Below are positions 12,296 to 44,419 of a DNA stretch of 64,000 nucleotides, in pieces. The notes beneath the pieces were generated by a model. The model was not told where the DNA came from and searched no databases. It was given only the letters and a program-made list of their open reading frames with translations. The position numbers and the translations under genes were made by a program. Every line of letters begins with the position of its first letter. Position 1 is the stretch's first letter. Source of the stretch: Haliotis rufescens. Lineage: Eukaryota. The stretch is from the NCBI RefSeq assembly GCF_023055435.1, contig NW_025964112.1, forward strand, positions 12,586,001 to 12,650,000, in the 5' to 3' direction.

Positions 12296-12387
12296 CTAAA
12301 TCCAGAGACCGTTTCTTCGGACGTTATAAAACGTTTATCACAGTCCATACACCGTACATATTAGAAAAGAACTGTGATTTGATGAGG

Positions 12388-13030: not shown

Positions 13031-13292
13031 CGAGAGCTCTTGTAATTTTGGCGAGCAGTGCGTCTTTGCCTTGAAGATTAGATGTCATTGATAAAATCTT
13101 CCTTTCACTCCTCTGTTGACGTGATTCTAAGGCCTTCAGTTTTGTTGACATCACAGCTACAGTGCGTTCCAGTCGAAGCATGGCGGTGAACAAAACATGT
13201 AAATTGGTATTTGGTCTGTTGTGTACTGTAGGGCTGCTGGAGGCAGAGGCAGCAACAACAAACAACGCCAGCACAAACATACAACGCATCAT
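13031..13292 (-). CDS. C1qDC gene A, exon 1: signal peptide plus coiled coil (spliced product ~219 aa)
   Basis: MMRCMFVLALFVVAASASS signal peptide; heptad-rich segment; CTC G|GTAAGT phase-1 donor is compatible with the acceptor at 11550. Confidence 0.85.
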
Positions 13293-13336
13293 GATCACTG
13301 GGCTGGGTAAGCGTGATAAAGTTAAAGCTCGGTGTG

Positions 13337-19853: not shown

Positions 19854-22066
19854 TTAATCTACGTGTGTAAGCATTCCTCCATAACTTGAAAATGTGTCTC
19901 CTCTCAGCGGAATGGTTGCTGTTGGGCTGTTATAAGCATCCATCCAGACCTGGTCTCCTTGGTTCAAGTGTGTAGTAGTGGTGATGGATGCTACACCATA
20001 TTGCTGCCCAGTGATATAACCACGAGCAATCATCGAGCTTTCTCTGAAGATGCGGAGATCCATGTCGGCGCTAGATCTTACCATCACATTTGCCAAGAAG
20101 AGGTATGTGCCAGAAACGGGGGCCGTGAATATGCCAGTAGCCTTGTTATAAGCATTCCCCTTGTTATAATTATAGGGGTATTACACTTAGTGATGTATTG
20201 GGTAAAATATTTACTTTTATTCTTAATAAACGGCTTACTATGTTTTGTGACATTTACGATAAGATACCAGAGTCTCAGGCAGGTTTTAGGGCTGGATACA
20301 GCACCGTTGATAATATATTTGTGTTGCAAAGTCTAATACAGAAATACTTATCTAAAGCTAATGGCAGATTTTACTGTTTATTTGTTGATTTTAGAAAAGC
20401 CTTTGATTGTGTAAATAGGAAATTGTTGTGGTATGTCATGTTAAATAAGGGTATACATGGAAAGTTATTTTATGTCATTAAAGATATGTATTTAAAAGTG
20501 AAATCGGCTGTAAAGTTATCAAATAGCACAGCAACTTGCTACTTTGAAACGCTAAGTGGTGTACGCCAAGGCTGCACCCTTAGCCCTATATTGTTCTCTT
20601 TGCTTATTGTTGAATTAGAATCAATGTTGCACTCCTCCGGCGAGAGGGGAATATTTGTGAGTCAAGAATCTCTAGACATTCTGTTGTTACTATATGCCGA
20701 TGATTTGTGCATAATTGATGATACTGTAGTTGGTCTCCAACGAAAACTTAATATCCTTAAATCTTTCTGTACTAAATGGGGTTTAGAAGTTAACCATAGT
20801 AAGACTGAAATTTTAGTTTTCAGAAATGGTGGAAAACTTAGGAGTACTGAGAAATGGAGGTTTGGAGATGTTAATGTTAAAGTATCTACCTATTATAATT
20901 ATCTAGGTTTGTTATTTTCAAATCGGCTGTGTTGGACGACTGGTATCAACTCTCTTGTTCAGAAGGCAAATAAGGCTCTGTTCGTCGTTAAGAAATTACA
21001 GCATTGTTTAAAGAACATACCCGTACATATACTTTTTAAAATATTTGACATTCAAATTAAGCCTGTATTATTATACACTTCAGAAATATGGGGCTATTCA
21101 AAAATTGCAGCTATTGAAAAATTTCAGATTAAATTCTGTAAATTTACTATTGGAATTGGAAGTCATGTTACAAATGTTGCTGCCCTTGGCGAATGTGGTA
21201 GATATGGCTTATTTATTGATTATCACAAGAGATGTATTAAATATTGGTTGAAATTGTTATCTTTACCCAGTTATAGATACCCTAAGCAATGTTATTTAAT
21301 GCTGAAATCTTTAGATGAAGTTAATCGCACTACATGGGTAACTTGTGTCAAAAGACTATTATTCAGTTATGGATTTGGCCACGTGTGGATTTCGCAGGAA
21401 GTTGGTAATGAGAACCTCTTTATTAATGCATTTATTCAAAGGTTAAAAGACTGTAACCAACAGGACTGGTATTGTAAAGTTTGTGAAATACGTAAATTAT
21501 CAATGTATAAGGAATATAAGTCATTGCTAACAGTTGAAAAGTATCTCTGTGAAATCACAAGCCGTCATTATAGACGTATGTTTTGTTTGTTAAGAATTGG
21601 CGAGTTGCCATTGATGGTAAATTTAGGTAGAAGATGCGGTATAGAGTACTGTAATAGGCAGTGCAGATATTGTAATTTACAGGAAATTGAAGATGAGTTT
21701 CATTTTATGCTTGTCTGCCCATGTTACAGATATTTAAGAAATAAGTATTTACCTATTTATTACTCTTCCAATCCTACCTTATTTAAATATAATACTCTAT
21801 TATCTTGTAACCGCACTAGTATTGTAACTAATTGTGTTAAGTATATACTGGAAGCACTTGCAATCCGAAATACTGTCACTTAATACCCTCTGTCATCTGC
21901 CTCATACTGTATTTTTCAATGAGTATTTGTACGTGGGCCTATGGCCTTTATACTGAAATAAAGAATTGAATCCCCTTGTTATATGAGACGGTGTCAAATT
22001 TCAAAGGCTTTCCTCCAATTTGGTTGATGTCTGACGGAAGGGAAACGCTGTACGCCACGTCGGTTG
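19854..22066 (-). pseudogene. C1qDC gene B, exon 2 (gC1q) interrupted by a LINE
   Basis: 22066-21971 encodes TDVAYSVSLPSDINQIGGKPLKFDTVSYNKG; 20168-19854 encodes the remainder with no other disabling change. Confidence 0.92.
20169..21970 (+). mobile_element. Young 5'-truncated non-LTR retrotransposon (RTE-X/CR1-group-like) with an open RT plus C-terminal CCHC frame
   Basis: NYRGITL, QAGFR, FVDFRKAFD, GVRQG, YADD, YLG and CxxC..EDEFHFMLVC motifs; stop at 21883; AATAAAGAATTGAA end; TSD TCCCCTTGTTATA at 20156-20168 and 21971-21983; no endonuclease domain. Confidence 0.95.
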
Positions 22067-23647
22067 CTTTATTGGAAAACAAAAATTGAAAACGTATATG
22101 TATATATTTCGATGTAGGAGTACCACTCTATTATTCAACTTAAATCTTTTGAAAAATGATTGAAATGATTCTGTCAATAGGATTTACTGGAGATTATGAT
22201 AGGTACTATTTGTGCAAAGGAGATACCATCGCTGTGTTGAGAGAAGTCATTCACTGCCAGGTTGACATAACATGGGTTAATTATGTGAATGTGTGAATGT
22301 AATGATTACTATTGGAGATGTACCGTAACGACATTTCAGATTAGACATTTTCAGATTATCTTTCAGACCTATTCGAAAAAAAGAACTTTTGATTCAAACG
22401 GTTTAGTAACAATGGTTATGCTAGGATTGATACATGTATGAACGTTCACCATAGTATCACATGCATAATTACAAATTTTAATACTTTAACAATTAGTGTT
22501 CAAAAGATAACACAATTATTATGGCAATGACTAAATCCAGAGGGGGCACGAGGGGCCTAGTCGTCTGAGGTGTCACGATTCGCTGTGCAGAGTTGCGTCC
22601 CTTGGGCACGCCAGTAAGCTATGATTGTGGGTTCTAATCCCGGTTCACCCCAATTGTGTTTCTAGGTTTGTCAGTACCCGTGCTCGTGGGTTTCACCGAA
22701 GTGGTAAACGTCTGAGACATGCATGACTTCGGGTGTTCCTCCCACATTAAGCCGACACGACGGCTCGGGGTACATAGGGTACATCTCACTATATGCCCCG
22801 AGAGATTAGTTGACAACGAATATATCTCACCGAAATTTATTCATACAGACCCGGAATACATGTCCGAGTAAAACGTTTTGATTCAGCCATTTTCACAGCG
22901 AGCAGACGAGGCAAACCGAATTACTTCCCTTTACCCAATGCATTCGGATAAACACCGGTTCGTTTCAGGTCAACGATATTTATGCGAGGCAAGCAAGTTA
23001 CCTTAGGTGTGTTCCAATTGACTTCTCAGGGTATATGAGCGGGTTACATGTCAATTAATTGCCCGTTCCTTAACTAATCAGAAGCTAGTAGTTTAATGTA
23101 TGATGCGACAAGTAGGGTTTTCTACCTCTCAAGAACGACAGTATGGAATTTCCTCAGTTTATAAATCTCACGATCATGGGAGATAAGTTCGGTGATTCTA
23201 ACGGGTCAACATTTCAGTACTTACCAATCTTCCTTTCACTCCTCTCTTGACGTGAGTCTATGGCCTTCAGTTTTGTTGCCATGACAATTACAGTGCGTTC
23301 CAGTCGAAGCATGGCGGTTAACAAACTATCAAAAACTCTTTCCGATTCTTAACCTGATGCGACGGACTTGTAAGTCTATACTTACCGAGAGCTCTTGTAA
23401 TGTTGGCGAGCAGTGCGTCTTTGCCTTGAAGATTAGATGTCATTGATAAAATCTTCCTTTCACTCCTCTGTTGACGTGATTCCATGGCCTTCAGTTTTGT
23501 TGACATCACAGCTACAGTGCGTTCCAGTCGAAGCATAGCGGTGAACACACTATTTATAACACAGCTCGATGTGTTACCCGACGCTGGGCTGCTGGAGGTA
23601 GAGGCAGCAACAACAAACAACGCCAGCACAAACATACAACGCATCAT
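21948..23647 (-). CDS. Truncated C1qDC cassette 1 (exons 23647-23386 and 22066-21948; ~126 aa)
   Basis: Intact TATA, ATG, donor and acceptor; reads into the antisense LINE as IQFFISV*. Confidence 0.6.
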
Positions 23648-24190
23648 GATCATTGGGCTGGGTAAGCATGGTACAGTAAAAGCTCGGTGTGTTTTATACC
23701 CTAGCCTGACGGAAGTGTCAATGTTAATATTGATTATCATCCACCAGGCATCATGATCTCTTTCTGCGTGGTCAGCATCAAAATATGAACAGCTGGCGGG
23801 CCATCTATCAGGTACGGACTTTTTTTCTCCTCCATGTGAGCTGATATTGGATCTTTGCAATCAATGAGTGTGAGAATATTATTTAACGCCGCAATCATCG
23901 ACATTCCAGCTGTGTTGGATCCGGGTAAGAATCGGTCTTCAGCAACCCATGCTTGCTGTAAAAGCGACTATGCTTGTCTTGTCGTAAAAGGCGACTAACG
24001 GAATCATGTGGTCAGGTTCGCTGACTTGGTTGATGCAATACATCGTATCCCAATTGCGTGGATCGATGCTCATGATGTCACAGTCACTGGATTGTCTGGT
24101 CCAGACTCGAGTATTAACAGACTGCCGTCATATAGCTGGACTATTGCTGAGGGCGGCGTTAAACAACAAACAAACATACATACATATGTA

Positions 24191-25588
24191 TGCACCCTTA
24201 GCCCTATATTGTTCTCTTTGCTTATTGTTGAATTAGAATCAATGTTGCACTCCTCCGGCGAGAGGGGAATATTTGTGAGTCAAGAATCTCTAGACATTCT
24301 GTTGTTACTATATGCCGATGATTTGTGCATAATTGATGATACTGTAGTTGGTCTCCAACGAAAACTTAATATCCTTAAATCTTTCTGTACTAAATGGGGT
24401 TTAGAAGTTAACCATAGTAAGACTGAAATTTTAGTTTTCAGAAATGGTGGAAAACTTAGGAGTACTGAGAAATGGAGGTTTGGAGATGTTAATGTTAAAG
24501 TATCTACCTATTATAATTATCTAGGTTTGTTATTTTCAAATCGGCTGTGTTGGACGACTGGTATCAACTCTCTTGTTCAGAAGGCAAATAAGGCTCTGTT
24601 CGTCGTTAAGAAATTACAGCATTGTTTAAAGAACATACCCGTACATATACTTTTTAAAATATTTGACATTCAAATTAAGCCTGTATTATTATACACTTCA
24701 GAAATATGGGGCTATTCAAAAATTGCAGCTATTGAAAAATTTCAGATTAAATTCTGTAAATTTACTATTGGAATTGGAAGTCATGTTACAAATGTTGCTG
24801 CCCTTGGCGAATGTGGTAGATATGGCTTATTTATTGATTATCACAAGAGATGTATTAAGTATTGGTTGAAATTGTTATCTTTACCCAGTTATAGATACCC
24901 TAAGCAATGTTATTTAATGCTGAAATCTTTAGATGAAGTTAATCGCACTACATGGGTAACTTGTGTCAAAAGACTATTATTCAGTTATGGATTTGGCCAC
25001 GTGTGGATTTCGCAGGAAGTTGGTAATGAGAACCTCTTTATTAATGCATTTATTCAAAGGTTAAAAGACTGTAACCAACAGGACTGGTATTGTAAAGTTT
25101 GTGAAATACGTAAATTATCAATGTATAAGGAATATAAGTCATTGCTAACAGTTGAAAAGTATCTCTGTGAAATCACAAGCCGTCATTATAGACGTATGTT
25201 TTGTTTGTTAAGAATTGGCGAGTTGCCATTGATGGTAAATTTAGGTAGAAGATGCGGTATAGAGTACTGTAATAGGCAGTGCAGATATTGTAATTTACAG
25301 GAAATTGAAGATGAGTTTCATTTTATGCTTGTCTGCCCATGTTACAGATATTTAAGAAATAAGTATTTACCTATTTATTACTCTTCCAATCCTACCTTAT
25401 TTAAATATAATACTATATTATCTTGTAACCGCACTAGTATTGTAACTAATTGTGTTAAGTATATACTGGAAGCACTTGCAATCCGAAATACTGTCACTTA
25501 ATACCCTCTGTCATCTGCCTCATACTGTATTTTTCAATGAGTATTTGTACGTGGGCCTATGGCCTTTATACTGAAATAAAGAATTGAA
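24191..25588 (+). mobile_element. Duplicated LINE 3' part (RT lacks its N-terminal motifs)
   Basis: Near-identical to 20573-21970; begins at CTLSP. Confidence 0.93.
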
Positions 25589-27265
25589 TCCCCTTGTTAT
25601 ATGAGACGGTGTCAAATTTCAAAGGCTTTCCTCCAATTTGGTTGATGTCTGACGGAAGGGAAACGCTGTACGCCACGTCGGTTGCTTTATTGGAAAACAA
25701 AAATTGAAAACGTATATGTATATATTTCGATGTAGGAGTACCACTCTATTATTCAACTTAAATCTTTTGAAAAATGATTGAAATGATTCTGTCAATAGGA
25801 TTTACTGGAGATTATGATAGGTACTATTTGTGCAAAGGAGATACCATCGCTGTGTTGAGAGAAGTCATTCACTGCCAGGTTGACATAACATGGGTTAATT
25901 ATGTGAATGTGTGAATGTAATGATTACTATTGGAGATGTACCGTAACGACATTTCAGATTAGACATTTTCAGATTATCTTTCAGACCTATTCGAAAAAAA
26001 GAACTTTTGAATCAAACGGTTTAGTAACAATGGTTATGCTAGGATTGATACATGTATGAACGTTCACCATAGTATCACATGCATAATTACAAATTTTAAT
26101 ACTTTAACAATTAGTGTTCAAAAGATAACACAATTATTATGGCAATGACTAAATCCAGAGGGGGCACGAGGGGCCTAGTCGTCTGAGGTGTCACGATTCG
26201 CTGTGCAGAGTTGCGTCCCTTGGGCACGCCAGTAAGCTATGATTGTGGGTTCTAATCCCGGTTCACCCCAATTGTGTTTCTAGGTTTGTCAGTACCCGTG
26301 CTCGTGGGTTTCACCGAAGTGGTAAACGTCTGAGACATGCATGACTTCGGGTGTTCCTCCCACATTAAGCCGACACGACGGCTCGGGGTACATAGGGTAC
26401 ATCTCACTATATGCCCCGAGAGATTAGTTGACAACGAATATATCTCACCGACATTTATTCATACAGACCCGGAATACATGTCCGAGTAAAACGTTTTGAT
26501 TCAGCCATTTTCACAGCGAGCAGACGAGGCAAACCGAATTACTTCCCTTTACCCAATGCATTCGGATAAACACCGGTTCGTTTCAGGTCAACGATATTTA
26601 TGCGAGGCAAGCAAGTTACCTTAGGTGTGTTCCAATTGACTTCTCAGGGTATATGAGTGGGTTACATGTCAATTAATTGCCCGTTCCTTAACTAATCAGA
26701 AGCTAGTAGTTTAATGTATGATGCGACAAGTAGGGTTTTCTACCTCTCAAGAACGACAGTATGGAATTTCCTCAGTTTATAAATCTCACGATCATGGGAG
26801 ATAAGTTCGGTGATTCTAACGGGTCAACATTTCAGTACTTACCAATCTTCCTTTCACTCCTCTCTTGACGTGAGTCTATGGCCTTCAGTTTTGTTGCCAT
26901 GACAATTACAGTGCGTTCCAGTCGAAGCATGGCGGTTAACAAACTATCAAAAACTCTTTCCGATTCTTAACCTGATGCGACGGACTTGTAAGTCTATACT
27001 TACCGAGAGCTCTTGTAATGTTGGCGAGCAGTGCGTCTTTGCCTTGAAGATTAGATGTCATTGATAAAATCTTCCTTTCACTCCTCTGTTGACGTGATTC
27101 CATGGCCTTCAGTTTTGTTGACATCACAGCTACAGTGCGTTCCAGTCGAAGCATAGCGGTGAACACACTATTTAAAACACAGCTCGATGTGTTACCCGAC
27201 GCTGGGCTGCTGGAGGTAGAGGCAGCAACAACAAACAACGCCAGCACAAACATACAACGCATCAT
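25566..27265 (-). CDS. Truncated C1qDC cassette 2 (27265-27004, 25684-25566)
   Basis: Copy of cassette 1. Confidence 0.6.
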
Positions 27266-27808
27266 GATCATTGGGCTGGGTAAGCATGGTACAGTAAAAG
27301 CTCGGTGTGTTTTATACCCTAGCCTGACGGAAGTGTCAATGTTAATATTGATTATCATCCACCAGGCATCATGATCTCTTTCTGCGTGGTCAGCATCAAA
27401 ATATGAACAGCTGGCGGGCCATCTATCAGGTACGGACTTTTTTTCTCCTCCATGTGAGCTGATATTGGATCTTTGCAATCAATGAGTGTGAGAATATTAT
27501 TTAACGCCGCAATCATCGACATACCAGCTGTGTTGGATCCGGGTAAGAATCGGTCTTCAGCAACCCATGCTTGCTGTAAAAGCGACTATGCTTGTCTTGT
27601 CGTAAAAGGCGACTAACGGAATCATGTGGTCAGGTTCGCTGACTTGGTTGATGCAATACATCGTATCCCAATTGCGTGGATCGATGCTCATGATGTCACA
27701 GTCACTGGATTGTCTGGTCCAGACTCGAGTATTAACAGACTGCCGTCATATAGCTGGACTATTGCTGAGGGCGGCATTAAACAACAAACAAACATACATA
27801 CATATGTA

Positions 27809-29206
27809 TGCACCCTTAGCCCTATATTGTTCTCTTTGCTTATTGTTGAATTAGAATCAATGTTGCACTCCTCCGGCGAGAGGGGAATATTTGTGAGTCA
27901 AGAATCTCTAGACATTCTGTTGTTACTATATGCCGATGATTTGTGCATAATTGATGATACTGTAGTTGGTCTCCAACGAAAACTTAATATCCTTAAATCT
28001 TTCTGTACTAAATGGGGTTTAGAAGTTAACCATAGTAAGACTGAAATTTTAGTTTTCAGAAATGGTGGAAAACTTAGGAGTACTGAGAAATGGAGGTTTG
28101 GAGATGTTAATGTTAAAGTATCTACCTATTATAATTATCTAGGTTTGTTATTTTCAAATCGGCTGTGTTGGACGACTGGTATCAACTCTCTTGTTCAGAA
28201 GGCAAATAAGGCTCTGTTCGTCGTTAAGAAATTACAGCATTGTTTAAAGAACATACCCGTACATATACTTTTTAAAATATTTGACATTCAAATTAAGCCT
28301 GTATTATTATACACTTCAGAAATATGGGGCTATTCAAAAATTGCAGCTATTGAAAAATTTCAGATTAAATTCTGTAAATTTACTATTGGAATTGGAAGTC
28401 ATGTTACAAATGTTGCTGCCCTTGGCGAATGTGGTAGATATGGCTTATTTATTGATTATCACAAGAGATGTATTAAATATTGGTTGAAATTGTTATCTTT
28501 ACCCAGTTATAGATACCCTAAGCAATGTTATTTAATGCTGAAATCTTTAGATGAAGTTAATCGCACTACATGGGTAACTTGTGTCAAAAGACTATTATTC
28601 AGTTATGGATTTGGCCACGTGTGGATTTCGCAGGAAGTTGGTAATGAGAACCTCTTTATTAATGCATTTATTCAAAGGTTAAAAGACTGTAACCAACAGG
28701 ACTGGTATTGTAAAGTTTGTGAAATACGTAAATTATCAATGTATAAGGAATATAAGTCATTGCTAACAGTTGAAAAGTATCTCTGTGAAATCACAAGCCG
28801 TCATTATAGACGTATGTTTTGTTTGTTAAGAATTGGCGAGTTGCCATTGATGGTAAATTTAGGTAGAAGATGCGGTATAGAGTACTGTAATAGGCAGTGC
28901 AGATATTGTAATTTACAGGAAATTGAAGATGAGTTTCATTTTATGCTTGTCTGCCCATGTTACAGATATTTAAGAAATAAGTATTTACCTATTTATTACT
29001 CTTCCAATCCTACCTTATTTAAATATAATACTCTATTATCTTGTAACCGCACTAGTATTGTAACTAATTGTGTTAAGTATATACTGGAAGCACTTGCAAT
29101 CCGAAATACTGTCACTTAATACCCTCTGTCATCTGCCTCATACTGTATTTTTCAATGAGTATTTGTACGTGGGCCTATGGCCTTTATACTGAAATAAAGA
29201 ATTGAA
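27809..29206 (+). mobile_element. Duplicated LINE 3' part
   Basis: Copy of 20573-21970. Confidence 0.93.
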
Positions 29207-30883
29207 TCCCCTTGTTATATGAGACGGTGTCAAATTTCAAAGGCTTTCCTCCAATTTGGTTGATGTCTGACGGAAGGGAAACGCTGTACGCCACGTCGGT
29301 TGCTTTATTGGAAAACAAAAATTGAAAACGTATATGTATATATTTCGATGTAGGAGTACCACTCTATTATTCAACTTAAATCTTTTGAAAAATGATTGAA
29401 ATGATTCTGTCAATAGGATTTACTGGAGATTATGATAGGTACTATTTGTGCAAAGGAGATACCATCGCTGTGTTGAGAGAAGTCATTCACTGCCAGGTTG
29501 ACATAACATGGGTTAATTATGTGAATGTGTGAATGTAATGATTACTATTGGAGATGTACCGTAACGACATTTCAGATTAGACATTTTCAGATTATCTTTC
29601 AGACCTATTCGAAAAAAAGAACTTTTGAATCAAACGGTTTAGTAACAATGGTTATGCTAGGATTGATACATGTATGAACGTTCACCATAGTATCACATGC
29701 ATAATTACAAATTTTAATACTTTAACAATTAGTGTTCAAAAGATAACACAATTATTATGGCAATGACTAAATCCAGAGGGGGCACGAGGGGCCTAGTCGT
29801 CTGAGGTGTCACGATTCGCTGTGCAGAGTTGCGTCCCTTGGGCACGCCAGTAAGCTATGATTGTGGGTTCTAATCCCGGTTCACCCCAATTGTGTTTCTA
29901 GGTTTGTCAGTACCCGTGCTCGTGGGTTTCACCGAAGTGGTAAACGTCTGAGACATGCATGACTTCGGGTGTTCCTCCCACATTAAGCCGACACGACGGC
30001 TCGGGGTACATAGGGTACATCTCACTATATGCCCCGAGAGATTAGTTGACAACGAATATATCTCACCGACATTTATTCATACAGACCCGGAATACATGTC
30101 CGAGTAAAACGTTTTGATTCAGCCATTTTCACAGCGAGCAGACGAGGCAAACCGAATTACTTCCCTTTACCCAATGCATTCGGATAAACACCGGTTCGTT
30201 TCAGGTCAACGATATTTATGCGAGGCAAGCAAGTTACCTTAGGTGTGTTCCAATTGACTTCTCAGGGTATATGAGTGGGTTACATGTCAATTAATTGCCC
30301 GTTCCTTAACTAATCAGAAGCTAGTAGTTTAATGTATGATGCGACAAGTAGGGTTTTCTACCTCTCAAGAACGACAGTATGGAATTTCCTCAGTTTATAA
30401 ATCTCACGATCATGGGAGATAAGTTCGGTGATTCTAACGGGTCAACATTTCAGTACTTACCAATCTTCCTTTCACTCCTCTCTTGACGTGAGTCTATGGC
30501 CTTCAGTTTTGTTGCCATGACAATTACAGTGCGTTCCAGTCGAAGCATGGCGGTTAACAAACTATCAAAAACTCTTTCCGATTCTTAACCTGATGCGACG
30601 GACTTGTAAGTCTATACTTACCGAGAGCTCTTGTAATGTTGGCGAGCAGTGCGTCTTTGCCTTGAAGATTAGATGTCATTGATAAAATCTTCCTTTCACT
30701 CCTCTGTTGACGTGATTCCATGGCCTTCAGTTTTGTTGACATCACAGCTACAGTGCGTTCCAGTCGAAGCATAGCGGTGAACACACTATTTAAAACACAG
30801 CTCGATGTGTTACCCGACGCTGGGCTGCTGGAGGTAGAGGCAGCAACAACAAACAACGCCAGCACAAACATACAACGCATCAT
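29184..30883 (-). CDS. Truncated C1qDC cassette 3 (30883-30622, 29302-29184)
   Basis: Copy of cassette 1. Confidence 0.6.
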
Positions 30884-31426
30884 GATCATTGGGCTGGGTA
30901 AGCATGGTACAGTAAAAGCTCGGTGTGTTTTATACCCTAGCCTGACGGAAGTGTCAATGTTAATATTGATTATCATCCACCAGGCATCATGATCTCTTTC
31001 TGCGTGGTCAGCATCAAAATATGAACAGCTGGCGGGCCATCTATCAGGTACGGACTTTTTTTCTCCTCCATGTGAGCTGATATTGGATCTTTGCAATCAA
31101 TGAGTGTGAGAATATTATTTAACGCCGCAATCATCGACATACCAGCTGTGTTGGATCCGGGTAAGAATCGGTCTTCAGCAACCCATGCTTGCTGTAAAAG
31201 CGACTATGCTTGTCTTGTCGTAAAAGGCGACTAACGGAATCATGTGGTCAGGTTCGCTGACTTGGTTGATGCAATACATCGTATCCCAATTGCGTGGATC
31301 GATGCTCATGATGTCACAGTCACTGGATTGTCTGGTCCAGACTCGAGTATTAACAGACTGCCGTCATATAGCTGGACTATTGCTGAGGGCGGCATTAAAC
31401 AACAAACAAACATACATACATATGTA

Positions 31427-34501: not shown

Positions 34502-36548
34502 GATCATTGGGCTGGGTAAGCATGGTACAGTAAAAGCTCGGTGTGTTTTATACCCTAGCCTGACGGAAGTGTCAATGTTAATATTGATTATCATCCACCA
34601 GGCATCATGATCTCTTTCTGCGTGGTCAGCATCAAAATATGAACAGCTGGCGGGCCATCTATCAGGTACGGACTTTTTTTCTCCTCCATGTGAGCTGATA
34701 TTGGATCTTTGCAATCAATGAGTGTGAGAATATTATTTAACGCCGCAATCATCGACATACCAGCTGTGTTGGATCCGGGTAAGAATCGGTCTTCAGCAAC
34801 CCATGCTTGCTGTAAAAGCGACTATGCTTGTCTTGTCGTAAAAGGCGACTAACGGAATCATGTGGTCAGGTTCGCTGACTTGGTTGATGCAATACATCGT
34901 ATCCCAATTGCGTGGATCGATGCTCATGATGTCACAGTCACTGGATTGTCTGGTCCAGACTCGAGTATTAACAGACTGCCGTCATATAGCTGGACTATTG
35001 CTGAGGGCGGCGTTAAACAACAAACAAACATACATACATAATTACAAATAAATGAACAATGAATGTGCATAAGAAAAAAACCCAGTATATATAGCCATGT
35101 TTTCGGCCGTGGTGTTATAATAATTTAACGTTTATCACCAATGTCCATATATGCGTCCCTCATTAGGTTTTATACCATCATGATCACTGGGCTGGGTAAG
35201 CATGGTACAGTAGAAGCCTGGTGTGTTTTATACCCTAGCTTGACGGAAGTGTCAATGTTATCATCCGCTTGTTTTACAATTTGGTTCAAAACTTGAAGCA
35301 TCATTATCTCATTCTGAGTAGCCAGCAATAAAATATGAACCGCTGACGGGCCATATATCACTTCCGATAACATGTCCAATTCCTGACATAGCTTATGATT
35401 TTGGACGTCCACAGTATATCAATAGCCAACCTTAATGGTTATCACTATAACTTATACGTTGGAAACACAGCGCTGATGTTTTATCTTACATTTGTGCATA
35501 GGATTCTGAAAATGAGCGAGTGTGAGAATATTGTTCAACGCCACTGTCAGTTATACTACTTGCTCAACTCACTCAATGTGACCAGTTAAGATCCGGGTTG
35601 GAATAGGTTTTCAGCAACCCATGCTTGTCGTAAAAGGCGACTATGCTTGTCGATAGAGGCGACTAACGGGATCGGATGGTCAGGTTCACTGACTTGGTTG
35701 ATGCAATACATCGTATCCCAATTGCATGGATCGATGCTAAGATGTCAATCACTGAATTGTCGGATTCAGACTCAATTATTTACGGACTGCCGTCATATAG
35801 CTGGATTTTGCTGAGTGCGGCGTTAAACAACAAACAAACAAAGCGTGTCATGTTTTAATAAACCGTCTCCATAATCTTAAGAAATCACTGCTAGACGCGG
35901 AATCCGTTGTACGATTCTGACTATATCATAATCATGTGTTCATAAATAACATTCAAAAAGTGACGATGCCAAATGTTGAAAAGGTGAGCGTATCCTGCCC
36001 CACTGATGGCATCAGTCACAAACACATGCAAAGGCGAAAACGAGAATATATGGTACAAATCAAACCGGGAATTGCATCGGACATCGCCTTTGTCACTGAT
36101 GCCTTAAATTTGGAAATGTCCTGCGCATGTCTGCAATAAAACATTTTGAAAACTTCACCGGGGCCTTGGAAAGTTTAAATCACTCATATTGTCATACAGG
36201 GGTTAGTCACTCTGAATCTCTATGCGTACATCTAAATATCATTAGCTATTTGACCATTATTGAACATACAGGTATTGTTTTTGTACCATTAAATCACTAG
36301 TTGATTTATCCCACGATCGTGTATGTACTGTAGACGTATGTAATAAATGTGTTGTGTCGTTTCTGTCCAATCAGAAAGTATAACCTGCGAAGGCGCAAGG
36401 TTGGGGAACCCCATGTCTTTGATATCTTACACTTGCACATTTGCACATGATCGGCGATACACAAATTATGTATTTTGTTATTGGTTTGTCAAATGCATAT
36501 TGGGAATCTGTGCTTCTCTATCTTTAGTCATATCTTTTATAATTTTCA

Positions 36549-36550
<2 letters not shown>

Positions 36551-36620
<70 letters not shown>
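36551..36620. repeat. (TG)35 microsatellite; same length at 44347-44416, short allele near 61003-61017
   Basis: Direct reading. Confidence 0.98.
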
Positions 36621-36623
<3 letters not shown>

Positions 36624-37013
36624 GGGCGGTTTCTGTATTAGTAAACCTCAAGGATTATTTTTAAACATCATGTTGGGCACTGTGGATCTGAGCATACAGA
36701 ATAGCGCATCAAAACACCTCAAACATTTCTCATGCCACACTGCAGGATATGTGGTATACCTTAGACCTAGGTGTGTAGCACGTGGAAAAGCGATGTCAGA
36801 CAGATATCAAATGTTTCAAATCGCCTGCAACAATCACTTAACACCTCTATCATTGTGACAGATGGTGGGTGTTTATTTCCAATTGATCGCCAGAGATAAT
36901 TACTTGACACCTTTACAATTGTGCATGTACTTGTATGGTAACACAAGTGATTGTTGCATATGTTCACCACACGATTTCATTTTAATGTACTGACGATTCT
37001 CTTTAGTACTGGT

Positions 37014-37184
37014 GGGGGCGGTCGGGTAGCCTATTGGTTAAAGCGTTCGCTCGTCGCGCCGAAGACTCGGGTTCGATTCCCGACATGGGTACACTGTGTG
37101 AAGCCCATTTGTGGTGTCCCCCGCCCTGATATTGCTGGAATATTGCTAAAAGCGGCGTAAAACCGTACTCATACACTCACTCAC
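37014..37184 (+). mobile_element. SINE family A (copies at 44810-44980 and 61402-61571)
   Basis: A and B boxes; TSD GTACTGGT. Confidence 0.9.
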
Positions 37185-37403
37185 TGTTGTACTGGTCCGT
37201 CTGAGTTCGTACATTCGAACATATACTCTTCAATAAAGGAAGGAGATACGCGCAAATAACTTAAAATTTCAGAAAATGTAAGAGAGAAATTAGTGTCTTG
37301 TAACATTACAAACGGTAGGGAAGTGTGACAGTAGATGTTATGACAGCGAACGACCTAGAAAGACGATAGGGGTAAGATGGGAAATGAAAAAATACGTTTT
37401 TTG

Positions 37404-37770
37404 ATCAGTATTGGGTAAACCGCTTCGATTTGTCAAACATTAATTCACTCGACGAGACATACTCCATATGTGTCTCCTAATGGCGATTTAAGGGAATCTG
37501 CCCCACTCCTCTTGCAGCGCCTGCCAAGTTCAGCCAATGTGGTCGACCTCATATCTCCCATCATGTCCCAGGCGTGTTCAATGGGGGAAAGATTTGGGTT
37601 CATTAATGACCATGGCATTCTACGGATGTTGTTTTGTCGGAAGTGACGATTGACGATTCATGCACGGTGAGCACAGGCGTTGTCGCCCTGAAAGACAAAC
37701 GTCGACCTACACGCATTGCAAATGGGACAACAAAAGCGTGTCAGTATGTTGTCCCGAGAGTACTGTCAAT
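37404..37770 (-). mobile_element. Tc1 transposase C-terminal fossil (copies ~45200-45566 and ~61790-62155)
   Basis: Manual translation FQGDNACAHRA*IVNRHFRQNNIRRMPWSLMNPNLSPIEHAWDMMG; not in the ORF track. Confidence 0.8.
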
Positions 37771-38586
37771 AAAAAAATAATCTGTGACGTCATTCTATTA
37801 TTTCAAAGCTCCATTATTTTTCAGGAATGGAGAGTTGTTTGTCAACTGTACATTATCTTGAAGCAACATTTGAATTAATTTCCACTTGGAACAGACGGAA
37901 GTATTGTTTAGATTCATTGACAAGAGAATAATTTCATTTTTTCCGAAAACGTGTCGCCAGCGGGATTCGAACCCGCATCGTTTGTTTTGATAACGTGTAA
38001 TTGTCAACCTCAGCTACGGCGGCACATGAAGGTGTGGTGTGAAATTAACTATTAAATATTTTCATAATTTTGCATAATGCTTAACAGCTCAAAATAATAT
38101 TATATATTTTGTGTTAGAGCAGGTTACCCACAACAATGTTCCTATTTATAGCAATTAAATAAACCTTTTGCGAGAAAAAACAAATAAGGTAATATAAATA
38201 TCCCTTCTTCGTGGCTCTATATTTCATATTATTCCCGTCAGCATGTATTAACAATGTGCAAGCGATAAATACTGGTTTATGGCCCAACGAAATTATGAAG
38301 AGCCGTGTACCATGCATTGTAAATGTCAGCTCGCGACGGAGCTTGGCGCACTTGCAACAGGAGTAGAGAACACATTCCTCGTGCATCACGCAAGGGCGAC
38401 TCACGCAGTAGAAATACAGACAACAAAGAGTTCTGGTTTATTTTTCGAATATTTTCAACAAAAGAATATTTTGTCAAAGTGTAAAAGTAGGGATGAGTTT
38501 TAAGCAGGGGATTATACTCGTAACTCACCATTCCTTAAACATATTTGGCCGCAGCCCCTGCGGGGCCTCTGCTCCATTATTTTGAA

Positions 38587-38748
38587 TGAGTGAGTATGGT
38601 TTTACGCCGCTTTTAGCAATATTCCAGCAATATCACGGCGGGGGACACCAGATATTGGGCTTCACACATTGTGCCCATGTCGGGAATCGAACCCGGGTCT
38701 TCGGCGTGACGAGCGAACGCTTTAACCACAAGGCTACCCGACCGCCCC
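38587..38748 (-). mobile_element. SINE family A (copies at 46383-46544 and 62970-63131)
   Basis: TSD CCATTATTTTGAA. Confidence 0.9.
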
Positions 38749-39222
38749 CCATTATTTTGAAGGAATGGAGAGTTACTCGGACATTGCCCTCCTCGTTACC
38801 CTTCCTTGCACAACATGGAGTGGGGTTCGATCAGTGATAGTGATGCCACCCAGCACCATAACGTACGTTAACCGATCCCGTAGGCTACACATGTTGCAGA
38901 CGCCGCATCGCTAGTTCATACACAAACAATGAATGAAATAAAGTAAATCAAAACTGTATGACTCGAGACGATTGACAGAAATAATATCACACAGAGATTA
39001 ATATACCTTCCTTGAAAGTAAGAGGCGACTACCTGGATCGAGTGGTCAGGCTCGCTGACTTGGTTAATGCATATCGTCGTATCCAAATTGCGTGGATTGA
39101 TGGGCATGATGTCAATCAACGGATTGTCTTGTCCAGACTCGAGTATTAACAGACTGCCGTCATATAGCTGGACTATTGCTGAGGGCGGCATTAAACAACA
39201 AACAAACATACATACATATGTA

Positions 39223-40620
39223 TGCACCCTTAGCCCTATATTGTTCTCTTTGCTTATTGTTGAATTAGAATCAATGTTGCACTCCTCCGGCGAGAGGGGA
39301 ATATTTGTGAGTCAAGAATCTCTAGACATTCTGTTGTTACTATATGCCGATGATTTGTGCATAATTGATGATACTGTAGTTGGTCTCCAACGAAAACTTA
39401 ATATCCTTAAATCTTTCTGTACTAAATGGGGTTTAGAAGTTAACCATAGTAAGACTGAAATTTTAGTTTTCAGAAATGGTGGAAAACTTAGGAGTACTGA
39501 GAAATGGAGGTTTGGAGATGTTAATGTTAAAGTATCTACCTATTATAATTATCTAGGTTTGTTATTTTCAAATCGGCTGTGTTGGACGACTGGTATCAAC
39601 TCTCTTGTTCAGAAGGCAAATAAGGCTCTGTTCGTCGTTAAGAAATTACAGCATTGTTTAAAGAACATACCCGTACATATACTTTTTAAAATATTTGACA
39701 TTCAAATTAAGCCTGTATTATTATACACTTCAGAAATATGGGGCTATTCAAAAATTGCAGCTATTGAAAAATTTCAGATTAAATTCTGTAAATTTACTAT
39801 TGGAATTGGAAGTCATGTTACAAATGTTGCTGCCCTTGGCGAATGTGGTAGATATGGCTTATTTATTGATTATCACAAGAGATGTATTAAATATTGGTTG
39901 AAATTGTTATCTTTACCCAGTTATAGATACCCTAAGCAATGTTATTTAATGCTGAAATCTTTAGATGAAGTTAATCGCACTACATGGGTAACTTGTGTCA
40001 AAAGACTATTATTCAGTTATGGATTTGGCCACGTGTGGATTTCGCAGGAAGTTGGTAATGAGAACCTCTTTATTAATGCATTTATTCAAAGGTTAAAAGA
40101 CTGTAACCAACAGGACTGGTATTGTAAAGTTTGTGAAATACGTAAATTATCAATGTATAAGGAATATAAGTCATTGCTAACAGTTGAAAAGTATCTCTGT
40201 GAAATCACAAGCCGTCATTATAGACGTATGTTTTGTTTGTTAAGAATTGGCGAGTTGCCATTGATGGTAAATTTAGGTAGAAGATGCGGTATAGAGTACT
40301 GTAATAGGCAGTGCAGATATTGTAATTTACAGGAAATTGAAGATGAGTTTCATTTTATGCTTGTCTGCCCATGTTACAGATATTTAAGAAATAAGTATTT
40401 ACCTATTTATTACTCTTCCAATCCTACCTTATTTAAATATAATACTCTATTATCTTGTAACCGCACTAGTATTGTAACTAATTGTGTTAAGTATATACTG
40501 GAAGCACTTGCAATCCGAAATACTGTCACTTAATACCCTCTGTCATCTGCCTCATACTGTATTTTTCAATGAGTATTTGTACGTGGGCCTATGGCCTTTA
40601 TACTGAAATAAAGAATTGAA
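39223..40620 (+). mobile_element. Duplicated LINE 3' part
   Basis: Copy of 31427-32824. Confidence 0.93.
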
Positions 40621-42297
40621 TCCCCTTGTTATATGAGACGGTGTCAAATTTCAAAGGCTTTCCTCCAATTTGGTTGATGTCTGACGGAAGGGAAACGCTG
40701 TACGCCACGTCGGTTGCTTTATTGGAAAACAAAAATTGAAAACGTATATGTATATATTTCGATGTAGGAGTACCACTCTATTATTCAACTTAAATCTTTT
40801 GAAAAATGATTGAAATGATTCTGTCAATAGGATTTACTGGAGATTATGATAGGTACTATTTGTGCAAAGGAGATACCATCGCTGTGTTGAGAGAAGTCAT
40901 TCACTGCCAGGTTGACATAACATGGGTTAATTATGTGAATGTGTGAATGTAATGATTACTATTGGAGATGTACCGTAACGACATTTCAGATTAGACATTT
41001 TCAGATTATCTTTCAGACCTATTCGAAAAAAAGAACTTTTGAATCAAACGGTTTAGTAACAATGGTTATGCTAGGATTGATACATGTATGAACGTTCACC
41101 ATAGTATCACATGCATAATTACAAATTTTAATACTTTAACAATTAGTGTTCAAAAGATAACACAATTATTATGGCAATGACTAAATCCAGAGGGGGCACG
41201 AGGGGCCTAGTCGTCTGAGGTGTCACGATTCGCTGTGCAGAGTTGCGTCCCTTGGGCACGCCAGTAAGCTATGATTGTGGGTTCTAATCCCGGTTCACCC
41301 CAATTGTGTTTCTAGGTTTGTCAGTACCCGTGCTCGTGGGTTTCACCGAAGTGGTAAACGTCTGAGACATGCATGACTTCGGGTGTTCCTCCCACATTAA
41401 GCCGACACGACGGCTCGGGGTACATAGGGTACATCTCACTATATGCCCCGAGAGATTAGTTGACAACGAATATATCTCACCGACATTTATTCATACAGAC
41501 CCGGAATACATGTCCGAGTAAAACGTTTTGATTCAGCCATTTTCACAGCGAGCAGACGAGGCAAACCGAATTACTTCCCTTTACCCAATGCATTCGGATA
41601 AACACCGGTTCGTTTCAGGTCAACGATATTTATGCGAGGCAAGCAAGTTACCTTAGGTGTGTTCCAATTGACTTCTCAGGGTATATGAGTGGGTTACATG
41701 TCAATTAATTGCCCGTTCCTTAACTAATCAGAAGCTAGTAGTTTAATGTATGATGCGACAAGTAGGGTTTTCTACCTCTCAAGAACGACAGTATGGAATT
41801 TCCTCAGTTTATAAATCTCACGATCATGGGAGATAAGTTCGGTGATTCTAACGGGTCAACATTTCAGTACTTACCAATCTTCCTTTCACTCCTCTCTTGA
41901 CGTGAGTCTATGGCCTTCAGTTTTGTTGCCATGACAATTACAGTGCGTTCCAGTCGAAGCATGGCGGTTAACAAACTATCAAAAACTCTTTCCGATTCTT
42001 AACCTGATGCGACGGACTTGTAAGTCTATACTTACCGAGAGCTCTTGTAATGTTGGCGAGCAGTGCGTCTTTGCCTTGAAGATTAGATGTCATTGATAAA
42101 ATCTTCCTTTCACTCCTCTGTTGACGTGATTCCATGGCCTTCAGTTTTGTTGACATCACAGCTACAGTGCGTTCCAGTCGAAGCATAGCGGTGAACACAC
42201 TATTTAAAACACAGCTCGATGTGTTACCCGACGCTGGGCTGCTGGAGGTAGAGGCAGCAACAACAAACAACGCCAGCACAAACATACAACGCATCAT
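40598..42297 (-). CDS. Truncated C1qDC cassette 5 (42297-42036, 40716-40598)
   Basis: Copy of cassette 4 at +7796. Confidence 0.6.
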
Positions 42298-44344
42298 GAT
42301 CATTGGGCTGGGTAAGCATGGTACAGTAAAAGCTCGGTGTGTTTTATACCCTAGCCTGACGGAAGTGTCAATGTTAATATTGATTATCATCCACCAGGCA
42401 TCATGATCTCTTTCTGCGTGGTCAGCATCAAAATATGAACAGCTGGCGGGCCATCTATCAGGTACGGACTTTTTTTCTCCTCCATGTGAGCTGATATTGG
42501 ATCTTTGCAATCAATGAGTGTGAGAATATTATTTAACGCCGCAATCATCGACATACCAGCTGTGTTGGATCCGGGTAAGAATCGGTCTTCAGCAACCCAT
42601 GCTTGCTGTAAAAGCGACTATGCTTGTCTTGTCGTAAAAGGCGACTAACGGAATCATGTGGTCAGGTTCGCTGACTTGGTTGATGCAATACATCGTATCC
42701 CAATTGCGTGGATCGATGCTCATGATGTCACAGTCACTGGATTGTCTGGTCCAGACTCGAGTATTAACAGACTGCCGTCATATAGCTGGACTATTGCTGA
42801 GGGCGGCGTTAAACAACAAACAAACATACATACATAATTACAAATAAATGAACAATGAATGTGCATAAGAAAAAAACCCAGTATATATAGCCATGTTTTC
42901 GGCCGTGGTGTTATAATAATTTAACGTTTATCACCAATGTCCATATATGCGTCCCTCATTAGGTTTTATACCATCATGATCACTGGGCTGGGTAAGCATG
43001 GTACAGTAGAAGCCTGGTGTGTTTTATACCCTAGCTTGACGGAAGTGTCAATGTTATCATCCGCTTGTTTTACAATTTGGTTCAAAACTTGAAGCATCAT
43101 TATCTCATTCTGAGTAGCCAGCAATAAAATATGAACCGCTGACGGGCCATATATCACTTCCGATAACATGTCCAATTCCTGACATAGCTTATGATTTTGG
43201 ACGTCCACAGTATATCAATAGCCAACCTTAATGGTTATCACTATAACTTATACGTTGGAAACACAGCGCTGATGTTTTATCTTACATTTGTGCATAGGAT
43301 TCTGAAAATGAGCGAGTGTGAGAATATTGTTCAACGCCACTGTCAGTTATACTACTTGCTCAACTCACTCAATGTGACCAGTTAAGATCCGGGTTGGAAT
43401 AGGTTTTCAGCAACCCATGCTTGTCGTAAAAGGCGACTATGCTTGTCGATAGAGGCGACTAACGGGATCGGATGGTCAGGTTCACTGACTTGGTTGATGC
43501 AATACATCGTATCCCAATTGCATGGATCGATGCTAAGATGTCAATCACTGAATTGTCGGATTCAGACTCAATTATTTACGGACTGCCGTCATATAGCTGG
43601 ATTTTGCTGAGTGCGGCGTTAAACAACAAACAAACAAAGCGTGTCATGTTTTAATAAACCGTCTCCATAATCTTAAGAAATCACTGCTAGACGCGGAATC
43701 CGTTGTACGATTCTGACTATATCATAATCATGTGTTCATAAATAACATTCAAAAAGTGACGATGCCAAATGTTGAAAAGGTGAGCGTATCCTGCCCCACT
43801 GATGGCATCAGTCACAAACACATGCAAAGGCGAAAACGAGAATATATGGTACAAATCAAACCGGGAATTGCATCGGACATCGCCTTTGTCACTGATGCCT
43901 TAAATTTGGAAATGTCCTGCGCATGTCTGCAATAAAACATTTTGAAAACTTCACCGGGGCCTTGGAAAGTTTAAATCACTCATATTGTCATACAGGGGTT
44001 AGTCACTCTGAATCTCTATGCGTACATCTAAATATCATTAGCTATTTGACCATTATTGAACATACAGGTATTGTTTTTGTACCATTAAATCACTAGTTGA
44101 TTTATCCCACGATCGTGTATGTACTGTAGACGTATGTAATAAATGTGTTGTGTCGTTTCTGTCCAATCAGAAAGTATAACCTGCGAAGGCGCAAGGTTGG
44201 GGAACCCCATGTCTTTGATATCTTACACTTGCACATTTGCACATGATCGGCGATACACAAATTATGTATTTTGTTATTGGTTTGTCAAATGCATATTGGG
44301 AATCTGTGCTTCTCTATCTTTAGTCATATCTTTTATAATTTTCA

Positions 44345-44419
<75 letters not shown>

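What the first reader, a model, noticed from the sequence alone, without database searches (positions are those of the whole stretch)
20573..42836. LINE-decapitated C1qDC gene amplified to five cassettes that could encode a secreted 'headless' stalk protein
Seen: each unit keeps the TATA box, ATG, signal peptide, coiled coil, phase-1 donor and acceptor, and the first ~31 gC1q residues. It then reads into the antisense LINE (IQFFISV-TAA, stop at 21948). The antisense LINE also supplies AATAAA about 190 nt downstream (21761-21756). The duplication unit covers this new transcription unit and excludes the rest of the gC1q exon. Known: the stop is in the last exon, so exon-junction-dependent NMD is not expected, and C1qDC proteins oligomerise through their stalks. 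Inference: a TE-created ~126-aa stalk-only protein at five copies could act as a decoy or dominant-negative tuner of the neighbouring intact C1qDC proteins. It could equally be a neutral amplified pseudogene.
Basis: partly seen in the sequence, partly recalled or inferred. Interest (0 to 1): 0.8.

Follow-up and report, generated by a model that had tools for sequence, protein, structure and literature searches.

The report
LINE-broken abalone C1q gene, locally amplified
In the red abalone reference genome a young jumping element has split the head-coding exon of a C1q-type gene and the broken front half was then copied five times, but another animal carries the unbroken gene, so this looks like a recent damaged variant, not a new working protein.

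Summary
Five near-identical cassettes (99.4-99.9%) each keep the TATA box, ATG, hydrophobic leader, a 61-residue helix, the donor and acceptor, and 29 gC1q residues. Each then reads 7 codons into an antisense LINE and stops at TAA (21950-21948).

The functional reading has no support.
- The window is Haliotis rufescens assembly xgHalRufe1, shown by matching contig and genome sizes.
- The LINE (20169-21970, + strand) is a 5'-truncated copy of a young family (copies 99.6-99.8% alike). It has a 13-bp target-site duplication.
- The rest of the gC1q exon is still open at 20168-19857.
- An independent DNA run holds the exact empty site, so the insertion is polymorphic.
- The 3618-bp unit arose at a non-homologous junction (SINE tail + TGTA + LINE 20573). 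The fifth copy came from recombination between two SINEs.
- RefSeq models on this same sequence (adiponectin-like X3/X4, 221 aa) skip the LINE, although no exact cut is GT..AG.
- No contig among the rows shown joined exon 2 to the LINE, but neither RNA-like run is known to carry this allele.
- AATAAA is not beyond chance.

Verdict: a recent null allele with local amplification. A decoy role is possible but unlikely (about 5%). I did not fold or search the joined 128-aa product.

The parts
20169..21970 (+). 5'-truncated LINE (non-LTR retrotransposon) inserted in the gC1q exon of gene B. ORF 20198-21883, 561 aa, no poly(A) tail.
   Evidence: RVT_1 E 1.4e-28. Homology to intact paralog gene A breaks at 20168 and resumes at 21971. 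Other genomic copies are 99.6-99.8% alike, and in the three + strand loci (L014, L017, L018) the flank differs from the window's right after 21970. A 3424-nt contig of run X16 matches exactly 20168-21971 and runs on at both ends.
20156..20168 (.). Left copy of the 13-bp target-site duplication (TATAACAAGGGGA on the minus strand).
   Evidence: Both copies match the single site 11455-11467 of gene A.
21971..21983 (.). Right copy of the 13-bp target-site duplication.
19857..20168 (-). Remainder of gene B's gC1q exon, cut off by the LINE. Open frame, present once only (next to unit 1).
   Evidence: tblastn 84.8% to gene A exon 2, no stops. Pfam C1q profile 26-126, E 7.5e-14. Matches residues 117-221 of RefSeq P0001 with 1 mismatch in 105.
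20573..24190 (-). Cassette 1 (3618-bp unit): 1398 nt of LINE, exon-2 piece, intron, exon 1, promoter, SINE.
24191..27808 (-). Cassette 2.
27809..31426 (-). Cassette 3.
31427..35040 (-). Cassette 4. Its right side runs into the original upstream flank.
39223..42836 (-). Cassette 5, made by the 7796-bp duplication.
23386..23653 (-). Exon 1 of cassette 1: leader, linker and long helix (89 codons plus 1 base). Donor G|GTAAGT.
   Evidence: AlphaFold2 single sequence gives helices 2-18 and 28-88, pLDDT about 90 over residues 41-89. Heptad a/d positions are 13 of 17 hydrophobic, against 12 of 44 elsewhere.
21948..22066 (-). Exon-2 piece of cassette 1: 29 gC1q residues, 7 LINE-derived codons (IQFFISV) and TAA.
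23692..23698 (-). TATAAAA, 39 nt upstream of the ATG. Kept in all five units and in gene A.
   Evidence: Gene A's copy appears in the ORF read. Promoter activity was not tested.
21756..21761 (-). AATAAA in the antisense LINE, 187 nt after the stop.
   Evidence: Present, but chance-level in this 67% A+T stretch.
23918..24186 (.). Very abundant short interspersed repeat upstream of the promoter. Its 3' tail is the right-hand breakpoint of the tandem unit.
   Evidence: At least 11 matches of 75-90% elsewhere in the window. Summed contig depth 4e5-1.5e6 in DNA run X5. Junction: tail + TGTA + LINE position 20573.
39018..39222 (.). Hybrid repeat at the joint of the 7796-bp duplication.
   Evidence: In alignment A1 the left two thirds match the repeat at 46814-47008 and its paralog at 63391-63585. 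The right third matches the cassette-end repeat, including the TGTA junction.
31220..47008 (.). Two copies of the 7796-bp duplication (31220-39212 and 39018-47008, 99.6%).
23226..23324 (-). Pseudo-exon inside the intron: a copy of the helix-coding part of exon 1 with its own GTAAGT.
   Evidence: Also present in gene A at 12871-12969.
11156..13292 (-). Intact neighbour gene A (RefSeq HIP-like isoform X1, P0018).
   Evidence: Residues 88-219 of P0018 match 11551-11156 at 100%. Exon 1 starts at 13292. Pfam C1q E 7.3e-19.
56198..58587 (-). Intact neighbour gene C (RefSeq C1QTNF7-like isoform X1, P0010).
   Evidence: Residues 1-87 match 58587-58327 and residues 88-221 match 56599-56198, both at 100%.

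Best explanation
This is a recent, still polymorphic loss-of-function allele of a red abalone (Haliotis rufescens) secreted C1q gene with a coiled-coil tail (RefSeq 'adiponectin-like'). Local amplification followed the break.

Proposed order of events:
1. A 5'-truncated copy of a currently active LINE family inserted, antisense, into the gC1q exon and made a 13-bp target-site duplication.
2. A non-homologous join formed between the tail of an upstream SINE and LINE position 20573, with 4 filler bases. It created a 3618-bp tandem duplication that carries the promoter, exon 1, the intron, 29 gC1q codons and 1.4 kb of LINE.
3. Unequal exchange between units raised the number to four.
4. Recombination between two SINE copies duplicated 7796 bp and gave the fifth.

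Shown: the anatomy, the junctions, the youth of the copies, and the empty site in another animal.

Inferred: the cassettes have no evolved function. Whatever they transcribe would be a by-product of five intact promoters. A 128-aa product that lacks about 100 of 127 head positions would be a misfolding-prone fragment, not a tuned regulator.
For: Species and assembly.
- Contig C334 has 65,595,138 bases, the same as the contig that encodes XP_048237935.1.
- G000 has 1,334,454,214 bases in 615 contigs. This equals the published 1,334,471,355 in 616 scaffolds minus the 17,141-b mitogenome (PMC9709998, passages).

LINE and target-site duplication.
- Searches show the element and its 13-bp duplication.
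- The family is young. There were 506 first-look candidates and 40 were scored. Five full-length matches compared base by base are 99.6-99.8% alike.
- A longer copy has a 1062-aa ORF with RVT_1.

Polymorphism.
- DNA run X5 has a 276-nt contig that runs 22194-21971 with 0 mismatches straight into 20155-20104, skipping 1815 nt with 13 ambiguous bases.
- That contig is not broken at 21971.
- X5 carries the units 2-5 letters at 22834, 23557 and 23905.

Youth.
- The units differ at 10 of 3618 sites.
- The cut-off exon remainder is still open and matches the RefSeq protein with 1 mismatch in 105.

Junctions.

Only here: five 100% copies of 21971-22480 exist in the genome, all in this window.

No truncated model: one search found no relative of 49-156 aa. 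RefSeq X3/X4 are 221-aa read-across models.
Against: - All five cassettes keep every signal needed for transcription, splicing and translation. Close relatives of the gene are well represented in RNA-like run X16, with contigs at depth 107-730. Transcription of the cassettes is therefore plausible and was not excluded.
- The runs examined may come from animals without the allele, so a missing chimeric contig says little.
- Only one independent DNA run was laid. The allele's frequency is unknown.
- A contig of X5 starts exactly at 20573, the unit breakpoint (record 16). This could mean the array junction exists in X5.
- Contig depths are not copy numbers, so the copy number in other animals is untested.
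- Five-fold amplification of exactly the promoter-bearing part is what a dosage-selected product would also look like.
Confidence: 0.8

Rival explanations
1. The five cassettes are expressed as a secreted stalk-only protein of about 126-128 aa. It co-assembles through its coiled coil with neighbouring C1q proteins and acts as a decoy or dominant-negative tuner.
For: - The frame is open and the TATA, donor and acceptor are identical in 5 of 5 units.
- The protein has a hydrophobic N-terminal helix and a 61-residue helix with a heptad pattern.
- Coiled-coil tails are proposed to build oligomeric complexes in mollusc C1qDC proteins (PMC6835236, passages).
- The stop lies in the last exon if the transcript ends inside the LINE.
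Against: - The insertion is polymorphic, with an empty site in X5.
- The units are about 0.1% apart, with a single coding difference, so nothing shows selection.
- No exon2-to-LINE contig was shown in X15 or X16.
- No short relative is in the protein collection.
- gC1q heads, mostly missing here, drive trimer formation (PMC10672478, passages).
- The AATAAA is chance-level. If transcription of units 2-5 ran on into the next unit, that unit's exon 1 donor could splice downstream of the stop.
Confidence: 0.05
2. The copy number is partly an assembly artefact. The LINE insertion is real, but the reference animal has fewer units than five.
For: - Units 3 and 4 differ at only 3 sites, two of them at the right edge.
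- The amplified stretch (26 kb) is longer than the HiFi read N50 of 15.7 kb (PMC9709998, passages).
Against: - Units carry private marks: unit 1 five, unit 2 two, and a shared derived base in units 2-5.
- The fifth copy has its own hybrid-repeat junction.
- There is no N inside the array. The only N run is 59079-59250.
- HiFi coverage was 50.8-fold.
Confidence: 0.08
3. The cassettes act at the RNA level. Five promoters drive antisense LINE transcripts that feed small-RNA silencing of this active LINE family.
For: - Each unit places 1.4 kb of an active LINE family antisense behind an intact promoter.
Against: - There is no data. The one small-RNA run laid (X21) placed 0 reads on the stretch, which the tool marks as no test.
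- The allele is polymorphic and young.
Confidence: 0.03

Closest known systems
sC1q-like type II C1qDC genes of molluscs (signal peptide, coiled-coil tail, C-terminal gC1q; two exons; tandem clusters), as defined in PMC6835236
   Same: The intact form of gene B and neighbours A and C have this make-up: a leader, a long helix and a Pfam C1q head split over two exons with a phase-1 intron. They sit in a tandem cluster.
   Different: The host is a gastropod. That paper says gastropods have fewer than a dozen C1qDC proteins (passage). The five cassettes lack about 100 of 127 head positions, so they are not members as they stand.
Polymorphic LINE insertion alleles that truncate a coding exon (TE-insertion null alleles)
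   Same: A 5'-truncated element, a target-site duplication, an exact empty site in another individual, and near-identical source copies elsewhere in the genome.
   Different: Here the broken 5' half, with part of the LINE, was then amplified five-fold by two further rearrangements. The public gene models read across the insertion as if it were an intron.
Gene presence-absence and copy-number variation of immune-type gene families in molluscs (Mytilus pan-genome, PMC7653742)
   Same: A haplotype-specific structural variant in an expanded lectin-like family.
   Different: I saw only the search listing and the start of the abstract of that paper. It concerns a bivalve and whole-gene presence or absence, not a TE-split gene with amplified fragments.
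Dominant-negative short isoforms in the C1q/TNF superfamily (for example the BAFF splice form delta-BAFF; recalled, no call)
   Different: Such isoforms keep most of the trimer-forming head and are conserved products. Here the head is almost wholly missing and the allele is young and polymorphic.

Membership tests
sC1q-like type II C1qDC protein (PMC6835236) | N-terminal signal peptide | tested here: inconclusive
   Residues 2-18 are hydrophobic (helix in the model; sequence). No signal-peptide predictor was available.
sC1q-like type II C1qDC protein (PMC6835236) | Coiled-coil tail before the head | tested here: met
   Helix 28-88 with pLDDT about 90 over residues 41-89. In the best heptad register 13 of 17 a/d positions are hydrophobic, against 12 of 44 elsewhere. 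No dedicated coiled-coil program was run.
sC1q-like type II C1qDC protein (PMC6835236) | Complete C-terminal gC1q domain (Pfam PF00386) | tested here: not met
   The cassettes keep 29 head residues, then 7 LINE codons and a stop. The remainder (profile 26-126, E 7.5e-14) lies beyond the LINE and only beside unit 1. The LINE-free allele would meet the feature (P0001).
LINE (non-LTR retrotransposon) insertion | Reverse transcriptase ORF | tested here: met
   RVT_1 E 1.4e-28 in the inserted copy and E 1.2e-31 in the longer copy L014.
LINE (non-LTR retrotransposon) insertion | Endonuclease domain in full-length copies | tested here: inconclusive
   Exo_endo_phos_2 E 1.3e-4, 22.2 bits, below the curated cut-off of 27.4. 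The fetched locus may not reach the element's 5' end.
LINE (non-LTR retrotransposon) insertion | Target-site duplication and an empty site elsewhere | tested here: met
   13-bp duplication. Paralog gene A has the single site. Run X5 has the exact empty site of gene B itself.
LINE (non-LTR retrotransposon) insertion | 5' truncation with a shared 3' end among copies | tested here: met
   Other copies continue 5' of 20169 with a common sequence and end at the same 3' base, with different flanks.
Evolved dominant-negative or decoy isoform | Expressed as a stable mRNA and protein | tested here: inconclusive
   No exon2-to-LINE contig among the rows shown for X15 and X16, and 0 reads from X21. The carrier status of those animals is unknown. 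No short relative found.
Evolved dominant-negative or decoy isoform | Maintained by selection (fixed or conserved, older than neutral variants) | tested here: not met
   Empty site in X5. Units about 0.1% apart, against 1.37% genome heterozygosity (PMC9709998).
Evolved dominant-negative or decoy isoform | Co-assembles with full-length partners | not testable with these tools
   Joined exon models were not to be folded or searched, and no multimer tool was available.

The most novel reading that the evidence does not exclude
The array is a newborn gene caught in its first generations. Five promoters would produce a secreted coiled-coil stalk with a LINE-derived tail. It would enter mixed oligomers with the neighbouring HIP-like and C1QTNF7-like proteins and lower their valency. 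The amplification would then reflect dosage selection on this haplotype in some red abalone populations.
Probability: 0.05. Interest if true: 0.7.

Novelty: new member of a known kind. Interest (0 to 1): 0.3.

Why it matters
As it stands this is an ordinary kind of event, but it is unusually well preserved. Four steps can be read base by base in one haplotype: the LINE hit, a non-homologous tandem duplication, unequal exchange, and SINE-SINE recombination. The unbroken allele survives in another animal.

It has two practical consequences.
- The RefSeq proteins XP_048237934.1 and XP_048237935.1 describe an intact 221-aa protein. The reference haplotype cannot make it by any GT..AG splice. Users of this annotation, and short-read mappers facing five identical exon copies, should know this.
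- The locus offers a ready marker for structural variation in an immune-type cluster of a species under conservation management.

If the stalk product were real and active, it would be a rare example of a TE-made regulator seen at birth.

Tried and rejected
- Canonical splicing of the LINE. All 14 cuts that remove exactly 1815 nt were listed. None is GT..AG, GC..AG or AT..AC. Rejected.
- A sixth, intact copy of gene B elsewhere in the assembly that could explain the RefSeq protein. None exists. Only the five 100% copies were found, plus paralogs of 91% or less.
- An annotated truncated protein. A search with the exon 1 peptide (size range 49-156 aa) gave 1 candidate and no hit. A blank there says little, since the collection seems to hold few abalone transcript products.
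- Small RNAs. Run X21 laid 0 reads, which the tool marks as no test.
- tRNA-like heads in the two abundant short repeats (22482-22779 and 23823-24260). ARAGORN found none in 22400-24300.
- Coding content of the extra 4.2 kb in the large duplication (35041-39222). Of the 4 ORFs of at least 90 aa, one is the LINE frame of cassette 5. I ran no family search on the other three.
- Copy number in other animals. Contig depths are not copy numbers, so I draw none.
- Earlier notes of this scan. One note on a hairpin at 13014-13031 did not bear on this. A word search found nothing.
- Papers. A search for C1qDC + truncated + retrotransposon gave 3 papers, none on a TE-split C1q gene by title or abstract start. 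This one search is the whole basis for saying I found no such case in print. The genome paper's supplements could hold annotation or haplotype detail that bears on zygosity.
The 128-aa product was never folded, searched or typed. Exon 1 alone was folded.

Full report
**What is there**

A self-comparison of the window shows a 3618-bp unit repeated four times head to tail (20573-35040) at 99.86-99.9% identity. A fifth copy lies at 39223-42836. It belongs to a larger 7796-bp duplication (31220-39212 against 39018-47008, 99.6%). The only N run in the window is 59079-59250, outside the array.

The five units differ at 10 of 3618 columns. Read on the minus strand, each unit holds:
- TATAAAA at 23698-23692.
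- An ATG at 23653.
- An 89-codon first exon ending in phase 1 at 23386, with donor G|GTAAGT.
- A 1319-nt intron, with the acceptor placing the next exon at 22066.
- 29 residues that match the start of a gC1q head.
- Seven further codons (IQFFISV) and TAA at 21950-21948.

These signals are letter-identical in 5 of 5 units. The exon 1 coding sequence differs at one base, 23557, giving Ile in unit 1 and Leu in units 2-5.

**The insertion**

- The plus strand of 20198-21883 is one open frame of 561 aa with a reverse-transcriptase domain (RVT_1, E 1.4e-28).
- The intact paralog gene A fixes the borders. Window 18152-20168 matches 9481-11467, and window 21971-22759 matches 11455-12227. Thirteen bases of gene A (11455-11467) therefore occur on both sides of the insert, as a target-site duplication.
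- The element (20169-21970) is 5'-truncated. A search of the whole genome gave 506 first-look candidates, of which 40 were scored, and several matches cover all 1802 bases.
- Five of these were compared base by base. They differ from this copy at 4-8 sites (99.6-99.8%). In the three + strand loci the flank differs from the window's directly after 21970. They also continue 5' of 20169 with a shared sequence.
- A longer copy has a 1062-aa frame with RVT_1 and a sub-threshold endonuclease match.
It is still an open frame (Pfam C1q profile 26-126, E 7.5e-14).

**Which genome, and what the public annotation says**

- A search with gene A's head exon returned Haliotis proteins.
- P0001 (XP_048237935.1, adiponectin-like isoform X4, H. 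rufescens, 221 aa) maps in three pieces on this window. These are exon 1, the exon-2 piece (22067-21972, 100%) and the remainder (20171-19857, 1 mismatch in 105).
- Its cluster mate P0017 (isoform X3) differs only at residue 33, L against I. This is the unit 2-5 against unit 1 difference.
- Contig C334 has 65,595,138 bases, the length of the contig on which these proteins are recorded.
- G000 has 1,334,454,214 bases in 615 contigs. This equals the published primary assembly size of 1,334,471,355 in 616 scaffolds minus the 17,141-b mitochondrial genome (PMC9709998, passages).

The window is therefore the red abalone reference, and the RefSeq models were built on this very sequence. They read across the LINE. 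Yet none of the 14 cuts that remove exactly 1815 nt has GT..AG ends, and no sixth copy of the gene exists in the assembly. I infer, without having seen the records, that RNA evidence from LINE-free alleles led the pipeline to model the insert as an intron.

Neighbours A (P0018, HIP-like X1) and C (P0010, C1QTNF7-like X1) map at 100% and are intact.

**Is the insertion fixed?**

No. One read-laying run was available (runs chosen).
- In DNA run X5 (same species label, another study) a 276-nt contig lies on 22194-21971 with no mismatch. It continues directly at 20155, skipping 1815 nt with 13 ambiguous bases. This is the exact empty site of gene B itself, since the paralogs are at most 91% alike here.
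- The contig is not broken at 21971, as it would be if LINE-bearing units were also present in that sample's graph.
- X5 carries the unit 2-5 letters at 22834, 23557 and 23905.
- Against this, another X5 contig begins exactly at 20573, the unit breakpoint. I cannot explain this with certainty.
- Contig depths are not copy numbers, so I make no claim on copy number in X5.

**Expression**

- Run X16 behaves as RNA. Introns are nearly empty, and a 241-nt contig (depth 730) joins an exon 1 of the short type to exon 2 and on into the remainder without the LINE.
- That contig has 12 mismatches (95%), so it comes from a paralog or a distant allele.
- Two further exon 1 contigs (depth 107-109) are 96-97% alike.
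- No contig among the rows shown crosses from exon 2 into the LINE in X15 or X16.
- The small-RNA run X21 laid nothing.

Since these animals may lack the allele, this is absence of evidence only. The exon 1 peptide found no relative of 49-156 aa in the protein collection.

**How the array arose**

- At each unit joint, the tail of an abundant short repeat (23918-24186) is followed by TGTA and then LINE position 20573. The original flank reads differently after unit 4 and unit 5. This is a non-homologous join with four filler bases.
- Units 2-5 share one derived base (23040). Unit 1 has three derived private bases in its gene part (22393, 23557, 23905), polarised with paralogs. This suggests a first duplication followed later by expansion.
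- The fifth cassette is preceded by a hybrid repeat. Its left part matches the repeat at 46814-47008 and its paralog at 63391-63585. Its right part matches the cassette-end repeat, including the TGTA joint. This is the signature of unequal recombination between two repeat copies.

**The product, if made**

- Folded alone, the exon 1 peptide gives a hydrophobic helix at 2-18, a short linker and one helix at 28-88 with pLDDT about 90 over residues 41-89.
- In the best heptad register, 13 of 17 a/d positions are hydrophobic against 12 of 44 elsewhere. A coiled-coil stalk is credible.
- The cassette keeps roughly 27 of 127 head profile positions.
- A review states that gC1q heads form the trimers mainly by hydrophobic contacts (PMC10672478, passages).
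- AATAAA at 21761-21756 is real but expected by chance. There are 4 in 1375 nt against 2.4 in shuffles, and at least one in 92% of 2000 shuffles.
- If transcripts of units 2-5 are not cut inside the LINE, they would run into the next unit's exon 1 donor. That would place a splice junction after the stop. This is inference only.

**Verdict**

The structure is real and nicely resolved. The best reading (confidence 0.8) is a recent, polymorphic LINE knock-out allele of an abalone coiled-coil C1q gene, whose broken 5' half was amplified by ordinary rearrangements.

The decoy idea is not excluded, but nothing found here favours it (about 0.05). A partial assembly artefact in copy number remains possible (about 0.08).

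The most useful by-product is the finding that the public gene models hide the insertion.

Noticed in passing
window 19857-23653, all five cassettes: RefSeq proteins XP_048237934.1 and XP_048237935.1 (221 aa) are modelled across the 1815-nt LINE insert on this very assembly. No exact cut has canonical splice ends. The reference haplotype as assembled cannot encode them by normal splicing.
   Followed up: partly
window 58327-58587 joined to 22067-21972 and 20171-19857: RefSeq isoform X2 (P0002, XP_048237933.1) joins gene C's first exon to gene B's head exon. This runs over more than 36 kb, past gene C's own head exon and all five cassettes. It suggests either long-range cross-gene splicing in the cluster or a modelling artefact.
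   Followed up: no
window 23226-23324 (and 12871-12969 in gene A): A copy of the helix-coding part of exon 1 sits inside the intron with its own GTAAGT donor. It is out of frame with the nearest upstream AG. Short-stalk relatives (P0004, P0005) end their first exon at the matching point (..ERKI).
   Followed up: partly
window 14266-14601, 35176-35359, 43052-43155, 59668-60096, 2421-2795: Further orphan or degraded exon-1-like pieces lie upstream of genes A, B and C. The cluster has a longer history of partial duplications.
   Followed up: no
window 22482-22779 and 23823-24260: Two extremely abundant short interspersed repeats, with summed contig depth of 1e5-1e6 in DNA run X5. ARAGORN finds no tRNA-like head in them.
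   Followed up: partly
window 49355-50838: An array of about 59 copies of a 25-bp unit (77% matches), G-rich on the plus strand, between region B and region C.
   Followed up: no
window 8197-15173, 17131-24186 plus 35041-47008, 53100-64000: The window is a threefold segmental repeat (regions A, B and C; 90-96% alike). Each carries one C1q gene plus shared flanks. Paralogs continue upstream on the contig at about 12.56-12.58 Mb.
   Followed up: partly
window 20573 (run X5, record 16): A contig of an independent DNA run starts exactly at the LINE-internal breakpoint of the tandem unit. It is unexplained: either the array joint or a LINE variant at that base.
   Followed up: no
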